From positions 1 through 64,000 of the IMG/VR virus record IMGVR_UViG_3300045999_010033: a DNA stretch of 64,000 bases, one strand, 5' to 3'. Shown piece after piece: positions 9,163 to 57,994 of the stretch. The translations under genes were made by a program, and so were the position numbers. A model generated the notes under the pieces. It saw only the letters and a list, made by a program, of their open reading frames with translations. It did not search any database and had not been told where the DNA came from. The first letter of the stretch is position 1, and each line of letters begins with the position of its first letter.

Positions 9163-9606
9163 TTACTTCAGTAATCCGGCGATTGCTTTCACTTTATCCA
9201 ACTTACTCATTGAGCCGTTTTCGATTGTAGTGAGAGCCTGCCATACCTTAAATTCATTTTCATCGTATTCCGTTACACCGGCTTCATCCATCCAAGCGAT
9301 TACGGCGTTGGCCTCGTCGATTTGGGCTTGATGTTCGGCAATCTCCTTTTGGTAATCTTCCCTAGTGATACCTACTACTTTAGCGTCATATTCTTGGAGC
9401 CAATTACCCTGCCATAATCCATCAAGCGTCTCGGCCGTTAGTACCTTACCTTTAATGGTTTTAACACGATATTTTTCTCCGATGGTATAATTTGCAGATC
9501 CCTCATTTCCAGTTACTACGATAATATCTCCTACTTTTGGCTTCTTACTCATTTTTAATTTGATTTTTAAGTTGTATATAAATTGTTTAATCCGATTTCG
9601 TTTCAT
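9163..9606 (-). CDS. SH3-like + coiled-coil paralog A1
   Basis: KVGDIIVV..YTIGEKYRV...WMDEAGVTEYDENEFKVWQALT. Confidence 0.8.
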   Translation of the reverse strand: MKRNRIKQFIYNLKIKLKMSKKPKVGDIIVVTGNEGSANYTIGEKYRVKTIKGKVLTAETLDGLWQGNWLQEYDAKVVGITREDYQKEIAEHQAQIDEANAVIAWMDEAGVTEYDENEFKVWQALTTIENGSMSKLDKVKAIAGLLK

Positions 9607-9613
9607 AATTCGA

Positions 9614-10036
9614 TTATTTCAAGAGAGCGGCGATGGCCCTTACCTTGTCCATCTTACTCATTGATTCATTTTCAATTGTAGTAAGTGTCTGCCAAACCTT
9701 ATGTTCGTTTTCATCATACACATCCGTACCGGTCTCGTCCATCCAAGCAATAATGGATTGATTGTGCTCAATATCAGTTTTGAGTTTGCTAATCCTTCCG
9801 GTCAGCGTTTGGATTTCGGATTCGATTGCGGCTTTATCTACGGTGCCTGGATCACAATCTTTGTACTTCAGATTATTACCTTTCCATACTCCATCCAAGT
9901 CTCCGGCCATAAATGTGGTGGCGCCGGTATGGGCTAGGACTCGATACCTTTTACCAATAGTATAACTGTGTGAGTTTGAATTAGCCTTTACAAGTACAAT
10001 GTCTCCGACCTGAGGAAGTGCTTTTAACCTTGCCAT
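9614..10036 (-). CDS. SH3-like + coiled-coil paralog A2
   Basis: QVGDIVLV..YTIGKRYRV...WMDETGTDVYDENEHKVWQTLT. Confidence 0.8.
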   Translation of the reverse strand: MARLKALPQVGDIVLVKANSNSHSYTIGKRYRVLAHTGATTFMAGDLDGVWKGNNLKYKDCDPGTVDKAAIESEIQTLTGRISKLKTDIEHNQSIIAWMDETGTDVYDENEHKVWQTLTTIENESMSKMDKVRAIAALLK

Positions 10037-10088
10037 ATTTGTTTTGTTTTATTTATTTAAGTTTTTGTTTTTAATTATAAGAATAGAA

Positions 10089-10487
10089 TTAACCCTTAAT
10101 CATTTGAGCAATTCGTTTCACTTTGTCAATCTTGCTGATATTCTCATCTTCCATAGCCGTCAGCACCTGCCATACCTTAAATTCATCTTCATTGAACACA
10201 TCGGAGCCGGTCATCGACATCCACGCAAGCATACTATGCCTATCTTCAATGAGTGCCTGTGCTTCGGAAATATCCTTCAAAAGTTCATCTTTGGTCATCT
10301 CCCAAATCTCTACCTGCGAAAACTTCAACCATCCACTCTCTGTTCCCGGTACAGCTGCCAATTCAGCTTTCAGAGTATTATCCGACCTATCTATACGTGT
10401 AATACTATATTTTATATCTTTACGATATCCATCCACGGTTGCGATAACTCTAATACATGCTCCGATTTTAACTTGGTCTGCTTTCAT
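10089..10487 (-). CDS. SH3-like + coiled-coil paralog A3
   Basis: KIGACIRV...WMSMTGSDVFNEDEFKVWQVLT. Confidence 0.8.
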   Translation of the reverse strand: MKADQVKIGACIRVIATVDGYRKDIKYSITRIDRSDNTLKAELAAVPGTESGWLKFSQVEIWEMTKDELLKDISEAQALIEDRHSMLAWMSMTGSDVFNEDEFKVWQVLTAMEDENISKIDKVKRIAQMIKG

Positions 10488-12264: not shown

Positions 12265-12283
12265 ATGTTTTTATTTTTATTTG

Positions 12284-12376
12284 TAGTCAGGACAGGATTC
12301 GAACCTGTACAAAGTTATTTACTATTACCTTTGCCAGCTCGGATGCTGGTGTGTCTACCTATTTCACCACCTGACC
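12284..12376 (-). ncRNA. tRNA-like RNA (Leu-type body, 6-nt non-anticodon loop)
   Basis: GGTCAGG/CCTGACT-A; D arm GTG..GGTAGA-CAC; CCAGC-ATCCGA-GCTGG; long variable arm; ACAGG-TTCGAAT-CCTGT. Confidence 0.8.
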
Positions 12377-40161: not shown

Positions 40162-40530
40162 TTATATTGTTTTTACTATTTCAATGAGTTTTTTGAGACA
40201 CGCTAACTCTGCTTCTTCGTATGTGTAAAAATCATACTCTCCACCTTCGTTGGGAATGTGATACCTCCAAGCGTTTCCAAGTTCGGAGTAACAAGTAATG
40301 ATTGGACTTGCTTTATACTTCTCACGAAAGAATCTGAATGCTTGTTGGTATAGCGGTGCTTCGATGTAATCGATAGAATCCCCATGGATTCTTGAATCCA
40401 ATTTCCACTCACCGCTATATTCAAACAAGTTCCAAAACCCAAAATAATCATCTGCATCAAACCCAAGTTGTTTGAGTTCATATGCTAATTCGTAAGGAAC
40501 AAAGTCTTTCATTACTTTATAATTTTTCAA
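40162..40530 (-). CDS. phage hypothetical (ELKQLGFD..YEEAELACL family)
   Basis: Paralog of 46883..47278. Confidence 0.7.
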   Translation of the reverse strand: MKNYKVMKDFVPYELAYELKQLGFDADDYFGFWNLFEYSGEWKLDSRIHGDSIDYIEAPLYQQAFRFFREKYKASPIITCYSELGNAWRYHIPNEGGEYDFYTYEEAELACLKKLIEIVKTI

Positions 40531-42313: not shown

Positions 42314-42769
42314 TTATACCTTTACCAAATGATCTGCTGCGTATGTGGCTATCGGACCAAGAGACTTGAATCTGCAGCGATATCCCATACCTTCCACAAG
42401 TCCAACGGCTTGACGGAATACTTCATTGGATTTGAATTTGGGATCTGGGTTGATGTCAATATCAATGAATTTCACTTTGGGCAAACCGGCCACTTTCAAT
42501 TCTTCGGCAGCTTCAATCGCATACCAAACTTCATTCAACAATCGAATGGAACGTGTAGGTTCTTTATCAGCTTTCCATCTACGAAAAATGACATGAGCAC
42601 CTTTACCTGGCGTATGCATCGCAACTACGATAGCATAGATTGTTCGGTCGGTAAAGTTTTGTGAGTCGCATCCAATTAGAATATCCACATCGGTATGTTC
42701 TTTAAGGTATTCTTTCATATATGGAACTAACTCGAATTCGTCTTTCTGATAAAGTTTTTTGAATTTCAT
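42314..42769 (-). CDS. RNase H-like YkuK family protein
   Basis: ILIGCDSQ, YAIVV, RLLNEV, DIDINPD, KSN, ADHL. Confidence 0.82.
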   Translation of the reverse strand: MKFKKLYQKDEFELVPYMKEYLKEHTDVDILIGCDSQNFTDRTIYAIVVAMHTPGKGAHVIFRRWKADKEPTRSIRLLNEVWYAIEAAEELKVAGLPKVKFIDIDINPDPKFKSNEVFRQAVGLVEGMGYRCRFKSLGPIATYAADHLVKV

Positions 42770-43814: not shown

Positions 43815-43820
43815 AGTTAG

Positions 43821-43894
43821 TGGAGATGGAGGGATTCGAACCCCCGACTTTTAGAATGCAAATCTAACGCTCTAGCCAACTGAGCTACATCCCC
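43821..43894 (-). tRNA. tRNA-Ala(TGC)
   Basis: TTAGA-TTTGCAT-TCTAA; G3-U70. Confidence 0.92.
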
Positions 43895-43933
43895 ATTGAT
43901 TATCGTTCTATGGACGTTTTTAATTTTTAATTA

Positions 43934-44404
43934 TTATAATACTTTTTCTGATTTTAGTTTTGTTTCAAATTTGTCAAATCGGGAATCAATATAAGAACGA
44001 TTTTCATCAATTCTTTTATGAATTTCCGGCTCAACCTGATCATGAACATTTTTCTGAAATTCATCAATACGTTTATGGATTTCACCCGAAACTGAATCAA
44101 TATCGCGATGTACATCAGGTAGTATGTGTTCATACACATCCCTTTTAAATTCATTGAGTTCTCTATTTGTATTTTCAAACATTGAATGCGTGTTTGAATA
44201 CACATCATCGAATCTCTTAACGTGCTTACTTACCATTATATTTGCCCTCACGATGCCGATAACCATACCAATTAGTATGACTGTAGCTATCCCAAGAACA
44301 TAGGCAATATACATTTGTTCCATAGTTTGTTTTCTCCTATATGTCAAAGAACGATAATCGTGCCCCAGGCGGGGGTCGAACCCGCACTCGCTTTCAGCGA
44401 ACAA
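43934..44404 (-). CDS. membrane-anchored coiled-coil protein (true start likely MEQMYIAY, ~44322)
   Basis: TM plus HKRIDE repeats; annotated start lies inside the tRNA-Leu. Confidence 0.65.
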   Translation of the reverse strand: MFAESECGFDPRLGHDYRSLTYRRKQTMEQMYIAYVLGIATVILIGMVIGIVRANIMVSKHVKRFDDVYSNTHSMFENTNRELNEFKRDVYEHILPDVHRDIDSVSGEIHKRIDEFQKNVHDQVEPEIHKRIDENRSYIDSRFDKFETKLKSEKVL

Positions 44405-44471
44405 GATTAACGCCGCGACGTGTTGAAGCTTGCGTTAAGTCTTGCATGTCTACCTATTCCATCACCAGGGC
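44361..44471 (-). tRNA. tRNA-Leu(TAA) with 26-nt anticodon-loop insertion (44409-44434)
   Basis: CAAGA-CT-TAA-[CGCAAGCTTCAACACGTCGCGGCGTT]-AA-TCTTG; Leu-type body. Confidence 0.85.
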
Positions 44472-44526
44472 CCATACCTACCTTAATAGGTATGTTTGTC
44501 TATAATGTAAATATAGTAAAAGTTTT

Positions 44527-45594
44527 TTAATTATCCAAATCTTTCCGAAAAGGTTTTGCGTATTTAGGGCGAATACATTTCCATATAATAGAATCGTAAT
44601 CCCTCCCATCTAACATAGAAAATAATATTGATGCATGATTATAACGGATTGCTTTGATTGCAAACTCTTTTCTGCTCAAATTTTCACTACGAATGATTGA
44701 GAATATTTCCAAATAATCACGTTTAATATTTTCAAATCTAACTACCAAGTCTTTTACGGTATCCTTTACCCACGTATCAAATTCGTCCGGCACTCTTTCC
44801 AATAACTCATTCAAATCACCACCGGTCCGCAACAATTCCCAGATATCTACATTCGAAACATTGGTGATTATCTTATGAAGTCTTACATACTCTTCACCTT
44901 TGATTTTCATTCTCTTCCCACCTTTGAAACGTATTACATAACCTTCGGCATCATTTGAAATCATATCCTTCAACTTAGTGAAGTCAGTAACACCATTGTA
45001 CTTTCTAACAACTCTTACATCGGTAAAAAGTGCTACTGATTTAGTCAAAGTTTCAAATTCAATTTCGTCCAAAGTATCTCTATCATATGCACCCAACAAT
45101 ACCAAACCCTCAAATGGGTAGCGGCAGACTATCCGATTCTCATCATATATGATTTCAAAAAGGTAAGTCCAATTTTTTCTCAATCCAGTTGTAGGATAGT
45201 TTTTCAATATAGATAATCCCTTCAACATTTCAGTTGCCTTAACGGCTTGCTCTGAAACGAATGAACCTCTCGTTGCTACTATCCAATCTCCGTTATAGTA
45301 AAATGCAATTCCTAAAGAACCGTCCATCTTTTCAAAGACTTCAAATGATTCGTTTGGAATTTCACTATTGGATAATTCTTCCATATTGAAAAATTTTGGA
45401 AATGGTTTGGCTACCACAGTGCCTTCATTATCCAAAACCAATCCACGGCAATCCAATGTAACTGCATCCCACAATCGGTCGTATTGGCACGTTCTGCTGT
45501 AATTGTAGATTGATAAAGGTAACGTTGGATGGTCTTGCTTAACTATCAATCCTCGTCCGATATAATCGTTCAATATGTTTAATGGATATTTCAT
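44527..45594 (-). CDS. T4 Rnl1 (RnlA)-family RNA ligase
   Basis: YNY, CRGLVL, PFPKFFN, FEKMDGSLGI, FEII, EGYVI, KIKGEEY. Confidence 0.9.
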   Translation of the reverse strand: MKYPLNILNDYIGRGLIVKQDHPTLPLSIYNYSRTCQYDRLWDAVTLDCRGLVLDNEGTVVAKPFPKFFNMEELSNSEIPNESFEVFEKMDGSLGIAFYYNGDWIVATRGSFVSEQAVKATEMLKGLSILKNYPTTGLRKNWTYLFEIIYDENRIVCRYPFEGLVLLGAYDRDTLDEIEFETLTKSVALFTDVRVVRKYNGVTDFTKLKDMISNDAEGYVIRFKGGKRMKIKGEEYVRLHKIITNVSNVDIWELLRTGGDLNELLERVPDEFDTWVKDTVKDLVVRFENIKRDYLEIFSIIRSENLSRKEFAIKAIRYNHASILFSMLDGRDYDSIIWKCIRPKYAKPFRKDLDN

Positions 45595-45995
45595 AATTTT
45601 ACACTAAAACGTTTCCGCATTTTTTCCAAAGTCTCATCCGGTACACCATGTACGGATTTATTACCATGTCTATTTTCTACAATCAATGATACAACGGTGT
45701 ATCCATAGCTCTTTGCTAACTTCAAATATGGTTCAAGTTCCCTTTCGGTAGTTGCCGTATTGGATACTACAATCTCTTGTCCATACTGAGTCGTTTCACT
45801 CATTTGCATCAATTCCTCAACACGCTTTTGACAATCCAAATGGGCTTCATGCAATTTCGAAGCGTCAAAATTGTAGTTACCGTTTGAATCGTAAAAGTAT
45901 TGGTCTGCCTCAAACACATTATTTGAAAACATATATTTAGCAAATGAGCTTTTACCACTACCGGGTAAACCACGTAATATGATTAATGTTTTCAT
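45591..45995 (-). CDS. P-loop polynucleotide kinase-like protein
   Basis: LRGLPGSGKS, EAD, VSNT, HGVP. Confidence 0.85.
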   Translation of the reverse strand: MKTLIILRGLPGSGKSSFAKYMFSNNVFEADQYFYDSNGNYNFDASKLHEAHLDCQKRVEELMQMSETTQYGQEIVVSNTATTERELEPYLKLAKSYGYTVVSLIVENRHGNKSVHGVPDETLEKMRKRFSVKL

Positions 45996-46703: not shown

Positions 46704-46886
46704 TCAGATGTACTTACTAATATCTTCTTTCTCAATCTCCACTATCGAGTCATCAAGGATTTCTTTGTTATCGTGTCCGACTACAATGGCGGTATAGAAC
46801 TTGCCATCCAGTTCATAGACTTGATAAGCTGAGTCTTTTACCCATTCCCCTTCTCCAATTAAGGTTGCTTTATCTAGGTTTATCAT
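46704..46886 (-). CDS. hypothetical protein
   Basis: Packed ORF. Confidence 0.5.
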   Translation of the reverse strand: MINLDKATLIGEGEWVKDSAYQVYELDGKFYTAIVVGHDNKEILDDSIVEIEKEDISKYI

Positions 46887-47278
46887 TGTTTTTGTTTTAC
46901 TATTTCAATGAGTTTACGGAGACAAGCAAGTTCTGCTTCTTCTTGTCCATCAAAACTCCCAACCCAAATAGATTCATCTTTATTTTCATCTTGAATCCAT
47001 ATTTCGTACACCTTAGAAAAGGTATCAGGCATTTCAATTACTACTGATTTTCTATACCTAACAAAACTAATAAATAGCCCATAGTTCTTACGAAAGAATC
47101 TGAATGACTGTGAAAATGTTGGACTGAGAGTTATACCATCGCCTTGTCTATCAAAAGACTTTGAATAAAACTTTTTGTTTAGGAAATGTGCAAAACACGG
47201 TTCATCAAACCCAAGTTGCTTCAACTCAAACGCATCTTTGAATGGGATAAAATCTTTCATTGTTTTTGTTTTAGTCAA
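46883..47278 (-). CDS. phage hypothetical (ELKQLGFD..EEAELACL family)
   Basis: Paralog of 40162..40530. Confidence 0.7.
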   Translation of the reverse strand: MTKTKTMKDFIPFKDAFELKQLGFDEPCFAHFLNKKFYSKSFDRQGDGITLSPTFSQSFRFFRKNYGLFISFVRYRKSVVIEMPDTFSKVYEIWIQDENKDESIWVGSFDGQEEAELACLRKLIEIVKQKQ

Positions 47279-47449: not shown

Positions 47450-48112
47450 TTATTTATATTTTTCTACTGATTCATGATGGTCGAAACTCATTAGGCTTTT
47501 GATTGGTTGCCTTCTCATACGGGTAGCAATTTCACTTACCGAAATCGGCCTCAAACCATTACCGTCCACACCAACATCCATCATTTTACCTGGTCCAATT
47601 CTACTAGCCATAGGTAAATGAACGTGTCCATGCAAATGAATTGCACCATTGGCCATTTGGTCCCAACTGGCAATAGGAAAGTGCATCAGTACAAACAATT
47701 CACTACTAACAAGCGGAGTACCCACATTCCGTTTTACAGTTAAATGTAAGTATTTGTTTACGGAACTGAAATGTGATTGACATCCTTCTTTGTTTCTCTC
47801 AATATGATGGTCGTGGTTTCCGGTGATGATGTGAATGTTCTTACATACGATACGATTACGGAAGGCTTCGATTTGCTCAAACCCACCAAAACTCCAATCG
47901 CCCAAATGAAAAAGAATATCATCTTGTCCGACTTCGGCGTTGATGTTATTCACCAATGTATCGTTCATTTCATCCAATGATTTGAAATCTCTACACGTCA
48001 CCGGGTCTTTCCATTGTGTTGTAGTGGAACAGATGTTGGCGTGATTGTAGTGTGTATCAGATGTGAACCACAATTGTTGACCTTTATTTAAACTTATTTT
48101 CATTTGTTTCAT
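47450..48112 (-). CDS. calcineurin-like phosphoesterase
   Basis: TSDTHYNH, HLGD, GNHD, MHFP, HGHVH. Confidence 0.9.
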   Translation of the reverse strand: MKQMKISLNKGQQLWFTSDTHYNHANICSTTTQWKDPVTCRDFKSLDEMNDTLVNNINAEVGQDDILFHLGDWSFGGFEQIEAFRNRIVCKNIHIITGNHDHHIERNKEGCQSHFSSVNKYLHLTVKRNVGTPLVSSELFVLMHFPIASWDQMANGAIHLHGHVHLPMASRIGPGKMMDVGVDGNGLRPISVSEIATRMRRQPIKSLMSFDHHESVEKYK

Positions 48113-50653: not shown

Positions 50654-50727
50654 TGGCGGTTCGTAGGGGTTACGCTCCCCTGCCTTCGCAGTGACAGTGC
50701 GATATTCTACTATTATACTAACGAACC
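50654..50727 (-). tRNA. tRNA-Asp(GTC), T-loop AGCGTAA
   Basis: TCGCA-CTGTCAC-TGCGA; G73, CCA encoded. Confidence 0.87.
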
Positions 50728-52018: not shown

Positions 52019-52096
52019 TAGTCAGGACAGGATTCGAACCTGCATGGTCACTCCTTTGTGTACACCGCGAGCTGCGTTACCATTCGCCACCTGACT
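52019..52096 (-). ncRNA. tRNA-like RNA without a canonical anticodon loop
   Basis: AGTCAGG/CCTGACT-A; GCG-AATGGTAA-CGC; GCAGG-TTCGAAT-CCTGT. Confidence 0.78.
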
Positions 52097-55628: not shown

Positions 55629-55700
55629 CGCTGATGGAGAATTACGATATCCCGACCTGAGTCTTAACAGGACCCTGCTCTACCTCTGAGCTACATCAGC
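55629..55700 (-). tRNA. tRNA-Asn(GTT), T-loop ATCGTAA
   Basis: GGGTC-CTGTTAA-GACTC; G73. Confidence 0.88.
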
Positions 55701-55989: not shown

Positions 55990-56800
55990 AAAGGTGAGAT
56001 TACCCTTTGTTGAGAACAGCCTTTAGAAAGATTATTAGTTCCTCTCTTATCCACCACCTTTTGAGCGGTATCCGTTCAGTGTCGGTTAGTAATGCTAACC
56101 ACTCATTAAGTTACTGACTACTCTCTTATTACTCCCCTTCTTCTACCCTGCCGAGCAGATTCACACTTGCGGTGTTAGAAGCTTTTCGTAAGAATCACAG
56201 ACCTCTTGCGGAGGTATCGTGGCTGGGAACAACTCCCAACTATGTAGACACCTTTCATCCGTAACTGATGGGCACTTATGCTTCATTTTGATTTTATAGT
56301 TTTGCTACCAAATGCAAGTATAAAGTTGGTTTGTAGATTGATTCAGGTAGTGGCCCATCTGCCAGCTCCCTCACCTTTTGAGTGAGGAAATACTAAACTA
56401 CCCGATGTGATATCCCTATCACCATATTTTAAGTCTGCTTCATAACTCATGCTTTGGTAAGCGAAGGTTAAGGGCAACAACGACACCACTCGTACTTTAC
56501 CATACCTTTCGGTTTTAAGTGAACTCTAATATTGGATAACGAAATGATACGAAGGGATTAAGTTCGTACTTCTCACATATACCCTATGGGTTATTCCTAT
56601 TATCCTTCCGGATTCAAATGAACTATCTACTTAGCCCATTCACCCAGACACCTCACCTACAGCCTTGCCGTCAGTTACTAAGTCCGAGTGGTATCCCACT
56701 TGCCTACTCAACCTCTTTTGGGAGGCGCATCGGTGCTTAACCAAACACCAACACTTTATCCTACTTTCGTAGTTTATTTAACGACCATAGGCGGCCGATT
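55990..56800 (-). ncRNA. probable GOLLD RNA (~810 nt)
   Basis: ORF-free, hairpin-dense region in a tRNA cluster; segments (CGCCTATGGTCGTTAAATAAACTACGAAAGTAGG; AAAGGTGTCTACATAGT; ACCGCAAGTGT; CTCGGCAGGGT) match my recollection of GOLLD; ends approximate; not confirmed by a covariance-model search. Confidence 0.72.
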
Positions 56801-57657: not shown

Positions 57658-57661
57658 AAAG

Positions 57662-57994
57662 TGGACGTGGTGGGAGTCGAACCCACGTCTTGATAAGAAA
57701 TCCTACCACCAACGTATCACAAGTTTATTCCTACATTCGGGTTGGACACCTATCTAACATTCTCACACCGTGTTAGCCGACGGTGATAGTGGTTCGATTC
57801 GGCCACTATGCCACATAGAGAATCACATTCTATTTTAATCCCACGATGTGTGCGGGAGCGGTTACGCAGCTACTGCGTACTCAGCGTTGGCGTATGTGTT
57901 GCCAGTTATTCTTCGATACAATATTAAGGGATAGTATCATTTCCCTACTTGTGATGGTAACACTCACATACCAATCAATTACCAATACACGCCC
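57662..57994 (-). ncRNA. ssrA: tmRNA, tag (A)GNTYANAEYAVAA*
   Basis: GGGCGTG/CACGTCC-A with G3-U70; T arm GTGGG-TTCGACT-CCCAC; ATAACT-GGC resume context; tag ORF 57903..57862. Confidence 0.93.

What the first reader, a model, noticed from the sequence alone, without database searches (positions are those of the whole stretch)
44361..44471. tRNA-Leu(UAA) with a 26-nt insert that base-pairs with and hides its own anticodon, next to an RNA ligase/kinase pair
Seen: the insert (44409-44434) lies between positions 36 and 37. TTAACGC (anticodon plus insert start) pairs with GCGTTAA (insert end plus positions 37-38), burying UAA in an extended stem. Removing the insert restores the canonical loop CTTAAAA. 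It is far too short to be a self-splicing group I intron and has no bulge-helix-bulge. It is the only UAA-Leu in the window, and the Rnl1 ligase and P-loop kinase genes lie immediately upstream on the same strand. Inference: protein-dependent tRNA splicing in a phage, or a conditionally activated or nuclease-proof tRNA; it could also be an evolutionary intermediate toward the cargo-tRNA family.
Basis: partly seen in the sequence, partly recalled or inferred. Interest (0 to 1): 0.78.

Follow-up and report, generated by a model that had tools for sequence, protein, structure and literature searches.

The report
Phage leucine tRNA with anticodon-hiding insert
A lake-water jumbo phage carries a genuine leucine tRNA gene interrupted by a 26-base hairpin that buries its anticodon; the insert is real and stable in this one phage lineage, but all relatives lack it, the neighbouring RNA ligase is a coincidental neighbour, and whether the insert is ever removed is still unknown.

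Summary
Window 44361-44471 (-) is a type II tRNA-Leu(UAA) carrying an exact 26-nt insert (44409-44434) between positions 36 and 37. The insert extends the anticodon stem by 7 pairs and buries UAA. Default ARAGORN and Rfam scans miss the gene. Twenty-seven tRNA-Leu(UAA) genes of other phages lack the insert, including the syntenic orthologue (L269). Pattern scans of IMG/VR, JGI metagenomes and 185,579 genomes found no second case. Strains about 98% identical from other samples keep the insert unchanged.

The ligase argument is weak. Rnl1, the kinase and a phosphoesterase form a standard jumbo-phage repair set. The closest syntenic relative (L257) has that set without this tRNA, and in one insert-bearing strain (L275) two ORFs separate ligase and tRNA. 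The phage encodes no RNase III or splicing endonuclease. The one RNA-library contig found is unspliced.

One new point is that exact excision needs two cuts in one helix, offset by 2 bp, leaving 2-nt 3' overhangs. That is RNase III geometry, and its ends are directly sealable by Rnl1.

Function is unresolved. My estimates are: excision by an RNase III-type cut plus ligase sealing, 0.35; neutral or inactivating insertion, 0.30; non-decoding tRNA-shaped RNA, 0.25. A hypervariable tRNA-like family seen in passing may be more interesting.

The parts
44435..44471 (-). 5' exon of tRNA-Leu(UAA): acceptor 5' strand, D arm, anticodon stem 5' strand and loop bases C32-A36 (anticodon UAA)
   Evidence: Rfam tRNA 38.4 bits; alignment with intronless orthologues
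44409..44434 (-). 26-nt insert between positions 36 and 37. Its first 3 nt pair with nt 22-24, and its last 2 nt (UU) pair with anticodon bases A35 and A36. The apical part is 18 nt with a further 2-bp GC helix.
   Evidence: Exact and unique in the 221-kb genome. Clean indel against 10 orthologues. Pair probabilities >= 0.95. No donor sequence found in 2 Mb.
44361..44408 (-). 3' exon: A37, A38, anticodon stem 3' strand, long variable arm, T arm, acceptor 3' strand and discriminator A73. CCA is not encoded.
44473..44494 (-). 8-bp leader hairpin ending 1 nt before the tRNA 5' end. A homologous hairpin precedes the intronless orthologue in L269.
43934..44323 (-). 129-aa ORF (N-terminal membrane helix plus coiled coil) with a conserved leader. 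It belongs to the cassette 'tRNA-shaped gene / ORF / tRNA-Ala' that moves as a unit among related phages.
43820..43894 (-). tRNA-Ala(UGC), the last element of the cassette
44527..45594 (-). T4 Rnl1-type RNA ligase. It is the neighbour in this strain but is not linked to the tRNA in relatives.
   Evidence: PF09511 70.9 bits; phrog_562 E 1.7e-73; synteny
45591..45995 (-). 134-aa P-loop polynucleotide-kinase-like protein (AAA_33)
47450..48112 (-). Metallophosphoesterase. With the kinase and the ligase it matches the three modules of the fused kinase-phosphoesterase-ligase profile phrog_8238, making a complete heal-and-seal set.

Best explanation
What it is (high confidence, about 0.9): a bona fide phage tRNA-Leu(UAA) gene that acquired, in one recent lineage of a freshwater jumbo phage, a 26-nt insert between positions 36 and 37. 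As transcribed, the RNA folds into a normal cloverleaf. Its anticodon arm, however, is a hairpin of about 14 bp (the anticodon stem, the 7 added pairs and a 2-bp GC helix) in which the anticodon is base-paired, so the primary transcript cannot decode.

How it most likely works (inferred; the confidence given applies to this part): the insert behaves like the intervening sequences of bacterial 23S rRNA. A double-strand-specific endonuclease of the RNase III type, supplied by the host, would cut both strands of the extended helix at the two insert junctions. These junctions lie 2 bp apart and leave 2-nt 3' overhangs. The cut would release the insert as a small hairpin and leave a tRNA nicked between A36 (3'-OH) and A37 (5'-phosphate). 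The phage Rnl1 ligase is an enzyme type specialised for sealing nicks in tRNA anticodon loops. It would reseal the loop to the canonical CUUAAAA and give a working tRNA for UUA, the phage's most used leucine codon. If the cutting enzyme instead left cyclic-phosphate and 5'-OH ends, the phage kinase and phosphoesterase could prepare them for sealing.

Shown: gene identity, insert boundaries, the fold, the cut geometry required for exact excision, the presence of the ligase, kinase and phosphoesterase, and stability of the insert across strains. Inferred: that any cutting or resealing takes place.
For: - Identity and boundaries.
- The helix is robust (p >= 0.95 per pair) and non-random (about 1% of shuffled or random inserts are as stable).
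- Both junctions lie inside one continuous helix. A36 pairs with the insert's penultimate U, and the last insert U pairs with A35. So exact excision is a staggered cut with 2-nt 3' overhangs on both products. Of the possible insertion sites in the loop, only this one gives that stagger (inference).
- The tRNA body is intact, with canonical G18G19, T loop and A73, and compensatory differences from the orthologues in the T stem and acceptor stem.
- The phage is 35% G+C and UUA is its commonest Leu codon at 27.9 per 1000. No other Leu(UAA) gene exists in the genome, and the other phage Leu tRNAs (CAA, UAG) cannot read UUA.
- The phage carries tRNAs for all 20 amino acids, and tRNA arrays of related phages carry an uninterrupted Leu(UAA).
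- A complete set of kinase, phosphoesterase and Rnl1 is present.
- The insert is kept unchanged in strains about 98% identical from other samples. In a variant about 5% divergent, the only two changes listed inside the insert lie in its apical part, and one turns a G-C pair into G-U.
- The insert is not a dispersed repeat and has no donor sequence.
Against: - No spliced product was seen. The only RNA-library contig covering the gene (run X21, 171 nt, depth 3.4) contains the insert and flanking sequence. No joint skipping 44409-44434 appeared in two metatranscriptomes. These are ordinary libraries that capture mature tRNA poorly, and DNA carry-over cannot be excluded.
- The phage encodes no RNase III (PF14622, PF00636) and no splicing endonuclease (PF01974).
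- The helix (12 bp with a bulge, plus 2 bp) is short for classical RNase III substrates (general knowledge).
- No precedent turned up in five literature searches.
- The insert is private to one shallow lineage, so there is no deep conservation or covariation to show selection.
- The ligase module exists without this tRNA in relatives and is not always adjacent even in insert-bearing strains.
- L257, the closest syntenic relative, has no Leu(UAA) in the 9 kb seen, so the tRNA may be dispensable.
Confidence: 0.35

Rival explanations
1. Neutral or inactivating insertion. A recent insertion disabled the phage's tRNA-Leu(UAA) gene. The RNA is made but never decodes, the host's own tRNA-Leu(UAA) covers UUA codons, and the hairpin is a by-product of how the insertion arose (for example a strand-switch or filler-DNA event at the naturally hairpin-forming anticodon arm).
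For: - The insert is private to one shallow lineage. All 27 tRNA-Leu(UAA) genes of other phages lack it, and three large collections hold no second case.
- Only an unspliced RNA contig was seen.
- The phage has no dedicated endonuclease.
- The closest syntenic relative L257 has no Leu(UAA) at this locus, so loss may be tolerated.
- Zero differences over 111 nt in L274 and L275, against about 2% in the flanks, is not statistically distinguishable from neutrality.
- This region is a hotspot of cassette shuffling.
Against: - A random 26-mer gives so stable an anticodon-burying helix only about 1% of the time.
- The insertion keeps all seven loop bases and leaves the rest of the tRNA flawless.
- No donor or repeat explains the sequence, and a simple strand-switch model does not reproduce it (it would copy a G opposite C32; read directly from the sequence).
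- The allele has persisted across several lakes, years and about 2-5% divergence.
- UUA is the phage's top Leu codon, and the phage otherwise keeps a complete tRNA set.
Confidence: 0.3
2. Non-decoding tRNA-shaped RNA. The insert is never removed. The molecule is used as a tRNA look-alike whose anticodon is deliberately masked. It could serve as a decoy or sponge for host tRNA-targeting defence nucleases or tRNA-binding proteins that read the tRNA body. It could also be a leucine-chargeable RNA kept out of the ribosome, since bacterial LeuRS does not read the anticodon (established knowledge for E. coli LeuRS). This includes the first reader's 'nuclease-proof tRNA'.
For: - This phage group demonstrably maintains many tRNA-shaped RNAs without a normal anticodon arm: the variable-core family has 153 copies in at least 120 viral contigs, with arms 95-100% conserved.
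- In sister phages a member of that family occupies exactly the slot that our gene occupies, directly before the conserved leader of the 129-aa ORF.
- The Leu identity elements outside the anticodon are intact (A73, G18G19, U8-A14; read).
- Phage tRNAs are known to change their anticodon loops to escape anticodon nucleases (PMC10264068).
Against: - Our gene is not homologous to the variable-core family in its acceptor, D or T arms.
- A decoy for an anticodon nuclease should display the anticodon loop and not hide it.
- This reading does not explain why the junctions fall in the one register that allows exact restoration of the loop by a staggered double-strand cut.
- It would leave the phage with no tRNA for its commonest Leu codon.
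Confidence: 0.25
3. Canonical intron of a known class: a group I self-splicing intron, or an archaeal/eukaryal bulge-helix-bulge intron spliced by an EndA/Sen-type endonuclease.
For: tRNA-Leu(UAA) is the classic host of bacterial group I introns (10.1101/2020.01.27.920355). Short introns of 24-26 nt occur in the viral tRNAs of L213.
Against: - At 26 nt it cannot hold a group I core, and no ribozyme or intron family matches (only three chance-level Rfam matches at E 2-6).
- The junction bases are A(-1) and U(omega), not U and G, and the site is 36/37, not 34/35.
- The fold has no 3-nt bulges, and the site is not 37/38.
- The phage has no EndA homologue. It is a bacteriophage, with tmRNA, GOLLD RNA and Shine-Dalgarno sites.
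- L213 appears to be a giant virus of eukaryotes.
Confidence: 0.02

Closest known systems
RNase III-excised intervening sequences (IVS) of bacterial 23S rRNA (Salmonella, Leptospira, Rhodobacter and others; general knowledge)
   Same: A short extra stem-loop replaces the tip of a native hairpin in a stable RNA. Its distribution is patchy and lineage-specific, and it has no coding capacity. Removal would be by a staggered double-strand cut in the extended helix.
   Different: The host RNA is a tRNA and not an rRNA. rRNA fragments work without being rejoined, whereas a tRNA cut in its anticodon loop must be religated. The helix here is much shorter. Excision has not been shown.
Phage T4 Pnkp + Rnl1 repair of tRNA-Lys cut by the PrrC anticodon nuclease, and the equivalent jumbo-phage repair sets (PMC7824862)
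   Same: The same enzyme families are present (Rnl1 ligase, P-loop 5' kinase, a phosphoesterase). The proposed substrate is the same kind: a tRNA nicked in its anticodon loop.
   Different: In T4 the break is an attack by the host on a host tRNA, and nothing is removed. Here the break would be part of maturing a phage tRNA and would release 26 nt. The ligase module is not evolutionarily linked to this tRNA.
Protein-spliced tRNA introns of archaea and eukaryotes, including those of giant viruses (L213 here), sealed in fungi and plants by Trl1, an Rnl1-family ligase with kinase and phosphodiesterase domains
   Same: Short (about 12-60 nt) non-catalytic inserts in the anticodon loop that pair with the anticodon region. 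Ligation chemistry is available from the same ligase family.
   Different: The position is 36/37 and not 37/38. There is no bulge-helix-bulge, no EndA/Sen endonuclease, and the setting is a bacteriophage. The splice sites lie in a fully paired helix and not in bulges.
[quoted passage not shown]
   Same: The same tRNA species, interrupted in the anticodon loop.
   Different: Those are ribozymes far longer than 26 nt (the survey screened introns >= 50 bp), sit at 34/35 and have U(-1) and G(omega). This insert is 26 nt, sits at 36/37 and has no catalytic core.
Phage tRNAs with altered anticodon loops that evade host anticodon nucleases (PMC10264068)
   Same: A phage tRNA whose anticodon region differs from the host form in a way that would block nuclease recognition.
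   Different: Those are point changes that keep the tRNA functional as transcribed. Here the anticodon is unusable unless the insert is removed.
Variable-core tRNA-like family of this freshwater phage group
   Same: A type II-like tRNA body with a non-canonical centre. It occupies the same genomic slot before the conserved ORF leader in sister phages.
   Different: The acceptor and T-arm sequences are different and highly conserved. The cores are 14-130 nt, unrelated to each other and weakly structured, with no recognisable anticodon stem or restorable loop.

Membership tests
tRNA (Rfam RF00005) | Cloverleaf with acceptor, D, anticodon and T arms, scoring above the curated threshold | tested here: met
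   38.4 bits against a gathering score of 29, model positions 1-71, in the local search. The cloverleaf is the MFE fold.
tRNA-Leu(UAA), bacterial type II | Long variable arm, A73 discriminator, anticodon UAA with A37, and orthology to annotated Leu(UAA) genes | tested here: met
   The alignment with 10 intronless Leu(UAA) genes is collinear apart from the 26-nt indel. The variable arm is identical to that of L199.
Group I intron | Catalytic core (P3-P9) far longer than 26 nt, U at -1 and G at the 3' end | tested here: not met
   The insert is 26 nt. No ribozyme or intron family matches in 44250-44600 (only three chance-level Rfam matches at E 2-6). The junction bases are A and U.
Archaeal/eukaryal BHB tRNA intron | Two 3-nt bulges separated by a 4-bp helix, usually at 37/38 | tested here: not met
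   The fold has a single 1-nt bulge (C32), both junctions are base-paired, and the site is 36/37.
Archaeal/eukaryal BHB tRNA intron | EndA/Sen-family splicing endonuclease available | tested here: not met
   PF01974 is absent from the 221-kb phage genome, while the controls matched. The host is unknown but bacterial (the phage carries a tmRNA).
RNase III-processed intervening sequence | The insert forms an extended helix replacing the tip of a native hairpin, with patchy phylogenetic distribution | tested here: met
RNase III-processed intervening sequence | Cuts on both strands staggered by 2 bp with 2-nt 3' overhangs | tested here: met
   This geometry is what exact excision would require. 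Actual cleavage was not tested.
RNase III-processed intervening sequence | Actual cleavage by RNase III, whose classical substrates have about 20 bp of helix | not testable with these tools
   The helix is 12 bp with a bulge plus 2 bp. The phage has no RNase III gene. A host enzyme would be needed.
T4 Rnl1-type RNA ligase (neighbouring gene) | Match to the Rnl1 nucleotidyltransferase domain | tested here: met
   PF09511 70.9 bits (cut-off 28.3); phrog_562 E 1.7e-73
Conserved ligase-tRNA functional unit | The adjacency is kept in relatives | tested here: not met
   Adjacency is absent in 80 loci, in L257 and L259-L262 and in L253. It is interrupted by two ORFs in L275.
Variable-core tRNA-like family ('cargo-tRNA') | Conserved acceptor AGUCAGG/CCUGACUA and T arm ACAGGUUCGAAUCCUGU | tested here: not met
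   Our gene has acceptor GCCCUGG and T arm GCGGGUUCGACCCCCGC. Only the genomic slot is shared.

The most novel reading that the evidence does not exclude
This is the first protein-dependent tRNA splicing event in the bacterial world. A phage tRNA would carry an rRNA-IVS-like hairpin that host RNase III excises and the phage's own Rnl1 ligase reseals. The supply of the phage's most needed leucine tRNA would then depend on phage-encoded repair enzymes, and T4-type RNA ligase would gain a maturation role beyond damage repair.
Probability: 0.3. Interest if true: 0.9.

Novelty: new variant of a known kind. Interest (0 to 1): 0.55.

Why it matters
All tRNA introns known in bacteria and their phages are self-splicing ribozymes. 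Protein-dependent tRNA splicing is regarded as a trait of archaea and eukaryotes. A short, non-catalytic insert that hides the anticodon of a phage tRNA is therefore unusual.

If it is removed, that would show bacteria and phages can splice a tRNA with ordinary processing and repair enzymes (RNase III plus Rnl1). It would link three topics usually treated separately: rRNA intervening sequences, phage RNA repair and eukaryotic Trl1-type splicing. If it is not removed, it is a clean natural example of a phage tRNA being turned into a non-decoding tRNA-shaped RNA.

There is also a practical point. Default tRNA finders and Rfam filters missed this gene, so similar cases may be under-reported.

The claim should be kept in proportion. 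The insert is private to one lineage, and nothing yet shows that it is processed.

Tried and rejected
- Megablast and blastn of the region against GenBank phages found nothing. The ligase is at most 39% identical to those of cultured phages.
- The pattern for the exact insert ends in IMG/VR gave one hit, which lies in coding DNA.
- A tighter pattern (13 + 8 fixed bases, gap 14-42) was run on IMG/VR, JGI metagenome contigs and 185,579 species genomes. All 31 hits were coding-sequence coincidences.
- The ligase-anchored search for synteny found no tRNA near 80 relatives.
- The insert was tested as a dispersed repeat or as a copy of another tRNA. Only chance 9-11-mers turned up. The 10-mer shared with the L209 tRNA-like RNA has E = 11.
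- The junction motif TTGGAYAATTAAAA was tested as a phage promoter. It occurs once in the genome.
- Three unannotated ORFs in the repair operon were probed for a nuclease. There are no Pfam or PHROG hits.
  - Two of them gave only chance-level Atlas matches.
  - ORF 46883-47260 gave a good model (pLDDT 87.5) whose best PDB matches are dsRNA-binding domains, but at E >= 0.06 and TM 0.30-0.41. That is inconclusive. The family is widespread and has a paralogue in the window, so it is not tied to this tRNA.
- PF04308 (YkuK-like) at 42314-42769 was considered as a nuclease. It is conserved in relatives without the insert and nothing useful is published on it.
- ARAGORN forced-intron screening of 395 loci (3.1 Mb) mostly produced artefacts. 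The L364 and L276 'Leu(UAA)+intron' calls are variable-core family members. The L213 set is real but appears to belong to a giant virus, with canonical 37/38 introns.
- TROVE/Ro, RNase III and EndA are absent from the phage genome.
- Searching the records behind L257, L253 and L213 was not possible because they are not held.
Full report
CONTEXT. The window is the first 64 kb of a 221,095-bp IMG/VR virus record rated complete. The record comes from lake water and recurs in many freshwater metagenomes from 2022-2025. It is a bacteriophage. It has a tmRNA, a GOLLD RNA and tRNAs for all 20 amino acids on the minus strand, Shine-Dalgarno sites and PHROG-type phage genes. The genome is 35% G+C.

Default ARAGORN and the whole-window Rfam scan both miss the gene. 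A local Rfam search gives tRNA at 38.4 bits (threshold 29) for 44361-44471 (-), with 29 nt where the model expects 3 loop positions. ARAGORN with introns allowed reports a 26-nt intron but labels the gene Lys(UUU), because it places the junction two bases earlier.

The ambiguity is resolved by comparison. Seventeen phage tRNA-Leu(UAA) genes share the 5' half and all have the plain loop CUUAAAA. L199, from a related phage (71% nucleotide identity over 3.1 kb), has the same variable arm and acceptor. A 12-sequence alignment shows a clean 26-nt indel between A36 and A37 with all seven loop bases kept. The insert is window 44409-44434 and occurs once in the genome.

The fold is a cloverleaf whose anticodon arm is lengthened by UUAACGC/GCGUUAA (7 pairs, each with p >= 0.95), with C32 bulged and a further 2-bp GC helix. 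About 1% of shuffled or random 26-mers placed at this site give an arm as stable. About 10-18% would pair all three anticodon bases. No other RNA family matches at E <= 1; the only other matches are three at E 2-6, none a ribozyme or intron family. There are no 3-nt bulges. This is the only Leu(UAA) in the genome.

Rnl1 (44527-45594) and an AAA_33 kinase (45591-45995) lie upstream on the same strand. With the metallophosphoesterase at 47450-48112, the three proteins each match one module of a fused kinase-phosphoesterase-ligase profile.

THE INSERT IS REAL BUT PRIVATE TO ONE LINEAGE.
- Contigs from other samples that are about 98% identical (L274, L275) carry the 111-nt gene unchanged. L258 ends on the first insert base.
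- Logan DNA contigs of runs X3 and X18 cover the gene without change.
- A variant about 5% divergent, seen in an RNA-library contig of X21, keeps the insert. It has substitutions at 44415 and 44421, both in the apical part; the first turns a G-C pair into G-U. The 44421 change is also seen in DNA run X3.
- Outside this lineage the insert is absent. Twenty-seven tRNA-Leu(UAA) genes of other phages lack it: the 17 sharing the 5' half, and 10 more in L254, L266, L268, L269, L271 and L272 and in further contigs of the family census.
- Pattern scans allowing any 14-42-nt insert at this site in IMG/VR, JGI metagenomes and 185,579 prokaryote genomes returned only coding-sequence coincidences.
- The insert has no donor sequence in 2 Mb of this genome and related DNA.

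THE LIGASE ADJACENCY IS INCIDENTAL.
- Eighty phages with ligases 44-57% identical have no tRNA within 3 kb.
- L257 has a ligase 81% identical and the same order: glucosaminidase ... kinase - ligase ... Gly, Gly, Ser, Leu(CAA), Ser, Leu(UAG) - RNaseH-like - DNA ligase. It has an unrelated 163-aa ORF where our tRNA sits.
- In L275, which does carry the insert-bearing tRNA, that same ORF and a 92-aa ORF lie between ligase and tRNA.
- The tRNA belongs to a different, mobile cassette: leader hairpin, tRNA-shaped gene, a 129-aa membrane/coiled-coil ORF with a strongly conserved leader, then tRNA-Ala. In L269 this cassette has a plain Leu(UAA) and follows the glucosaminidase gene directly.
- Kinase, phosphoesterase and Rnl1 sets are common repair equipment of tRNA-rich jumbo phages (PMC7824862).

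WHAT THE ANATOMY ALLOWS. Known bacterial tRNA introns are group I ribozymes, and this insert is not one. It is not a BHB intron either, and the phage has no EndA.

Both junctions lie inside one continuous helix. A36 pairs with the insert's penultimate U, and the last insert U pairs with A35. Exact excision is therefore a double-strand cut staggered by 2 bp, leaving 2-nt 3' overhangs on both the tRNA and the released hairpin. That is the product geometry of RNase III, whose 3'-OH and 5'-phosphate ends are what an Rnl1 ligase seals (established enzymology). Among the possible insertion sites in this loop, only 36/37 gives that stagger (my inference).

The closest analogy is the RNase III-excised intervening sequences of 23S rRNA, with a religation step added.

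Points against this reading:
- The phage has no RNase III, so a host enzyme would be needed.
- The helix is short for that enzyme.
- No literature precedent was found.
- The only RNA-library contig over the gene is unspliced and includes flanking sequence, so it is a precursor or DNA carry-over. No joint removing the insert was seen in two metatranscriptomes. These libraries are poor at capturing mature tRNA.

WEIGHING THE READINGS.
- For a processed, functional tRNA: the helix is non-random, the +2 register is the one that allows restoration, the tRNA body is flawless, UUA is the phage's top Leu codon (27.9 per 1000), no other tRNA can read UUA, the tRNA set is otherwise complete, and all the sealing enzymes are present.
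- For a dead gene: the lineage is shallow, no endonuclease or spliced product was found, and L257 seems to do without this tRNA.
- For a non-decoding tRNA-shaped RNA: this phage group keeps many such RNAs, and one of them occupies the same slot in sister phages.
- My estimates are 0.35, 0.30 and 0.25, with 0.10 left for other explanations. None is established.

SIDE FINDINGS.
- A large family of tRNA-like genes has near-invariant acceptor, D and T arms and hypervariable centres. It includes window 12283-12376 and 52019-52096. There are 153 copies in at least 120 viral contigs, 138 of them unique, 65-182 nt long. ARAGORN calls only 28 of them tRNAs.
- A second, smaller tRNA-like family is represented by L208 and L209.
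- L213, L215 and L221 carry four tRNAs with 24-26-nt introns at 37/38. The virus has sugar-nucleotide enzymes and a borderline TBP-like match, so it is probably a giant virus of eukaryotes, which is known biology.
- ORF 46883-47260 has a dsRBD-like topology, but the structural matches are not significant.

VERDICT. This is a real and unusual but lineage-restricted feature. It does not belong to any known tRNA intron class, and its link to the ligase is not supported by comparison. A concrete and cheaply testable mechanism is available. The decisive experiments are simple: RNase III and ligase on a 111-nt transcript, and a junction-spanning RNA assay.

Noticed in passing
window 12283-12376 (-), 52019-52096 (-); L203 1831-1920 and about 2084-2180; L254 8114-8261, about 9430-9519, 9991-10092; L264-L273 directly upstream of the ORF homologous to window 43934-44323; L276-L395: A large family of tRNA-like genes. 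The acceptor (AGUCAGG/CCUGACUA), a type II-like D arm and the T arm (ACAGGUUCGAAUCCUGU) are nearly invariant. The centre is hypervariable (about 14-130 nt), unrelated between copies and weakly structured. ARAGORN calls only 28 of them tRNAs, with scattered anticodons. Conserved arms with diversifying cores suggest a scaffolded small RNA or a decoy. It may be more novel than the assigned finding.
   Followed up: partly
L208 7292-7391 (-); L209 10947-11048 (+): A second tRNA-like type. The acceptor, D and T arms are normal (Rfam tRNA 42.3 bits), but a hairpin region of about 39 nt, or a 9-nt loop, stands in place of the 17-nt anticodon arm. The two copies are homologous in their arms and differ in the centre.
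   Followed up: partly
L203 2410-2511 (+): A 102-nt tRNA-like RNA (Rfam tRNA 37.8 bits) whose anticodon region is an 11-bp hairpin. ARAGORN reads it as a CUA-anticodon tRNA with a 23-nt insert pairing with the loop. No clean canonical tRNA could be restored by excision.
   Followed up: partly
L213 6968-8096 (also L215, L221): Four adjacent tRNAs (Thr-UGU, Arg-UCU, Tyr-GUA, Asn-GUU), each with a 24-26-nt insert at the canonical 37/38 site containing a G-rich hairpin. The contig encodes sugar-nucleotide enzymes and an 833-aa protein with a borderline TATA-binding-protein match, so it is probably a giant virus of eukaryotes whose tRNA introns are spliced by the host.
   Followed up: partly
window 55991-56405 (-), 57661-57994 (-): A GOLLD RNA (296.6 bits) and a phage-encoded tmRNA (tag GNTYANAEYAVAA) are embedded in the tRNA array. 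GOLLD plus tmRNA plus tRNA arrays recur in the related freshwater phage contigs L197, L205, L207, L208 and L211.
   Followed up: partly
window 50657-50727 (-), 55629-55700 (-): Two tRNAs are found by Rfam but missed by ARAGORN. By manual reading of the loops they are Asp(GUC) and Asn(GUU), both with unusual T arms. With them the phage has tRNAs for all 20 amino acids.
   Followed up: partly
window 46883-47260 (-), paralogue 40162-40530 (-): A member of a widespread phage-only protein family (more than 1000 homologues, no Pfam match). The model is confident (pLDDT 87.5) and its C-terminal alpha-beta-beta-beta-alpha part gives dsRNA-binding domains as best PDB matches, but without significance (E >= 0.06, TM 0.30-0.41).
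   Followed up: yes
window 43927-44540; L275 1890-2830; L257 5044-5730: The stretch between the ligase and the tRNA-Gly genes is a hotspot of cassette exchange. ORFs and tRNA-shaped genes are swapped between strains, and in L275 each junction repeats a TTGGAYAATTAAAA-like motif. A Logan contig in X18 replaces 43928-44218 with 255 unrelated bases.
   Followed up: partly
window 44361-44471; 52019-52096: An annotation blind spot. Both tRNA-shaped genes score above Rfam's tRNA threshold (38.4 and 39.8 bits) but are dropped by the default speed filters on a 64-kb input and by default ARAGORN. They appear only in short-range or intron-permissive searches.
   Followed up: yes
window 42314-42769 (-): A PF04308 (YkuK-type RNase H-like) protein is encoded at the edge of the tRNA array. 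It is conserved at the same place in L257 and L205. Its function is unknown.
   Followed up: no
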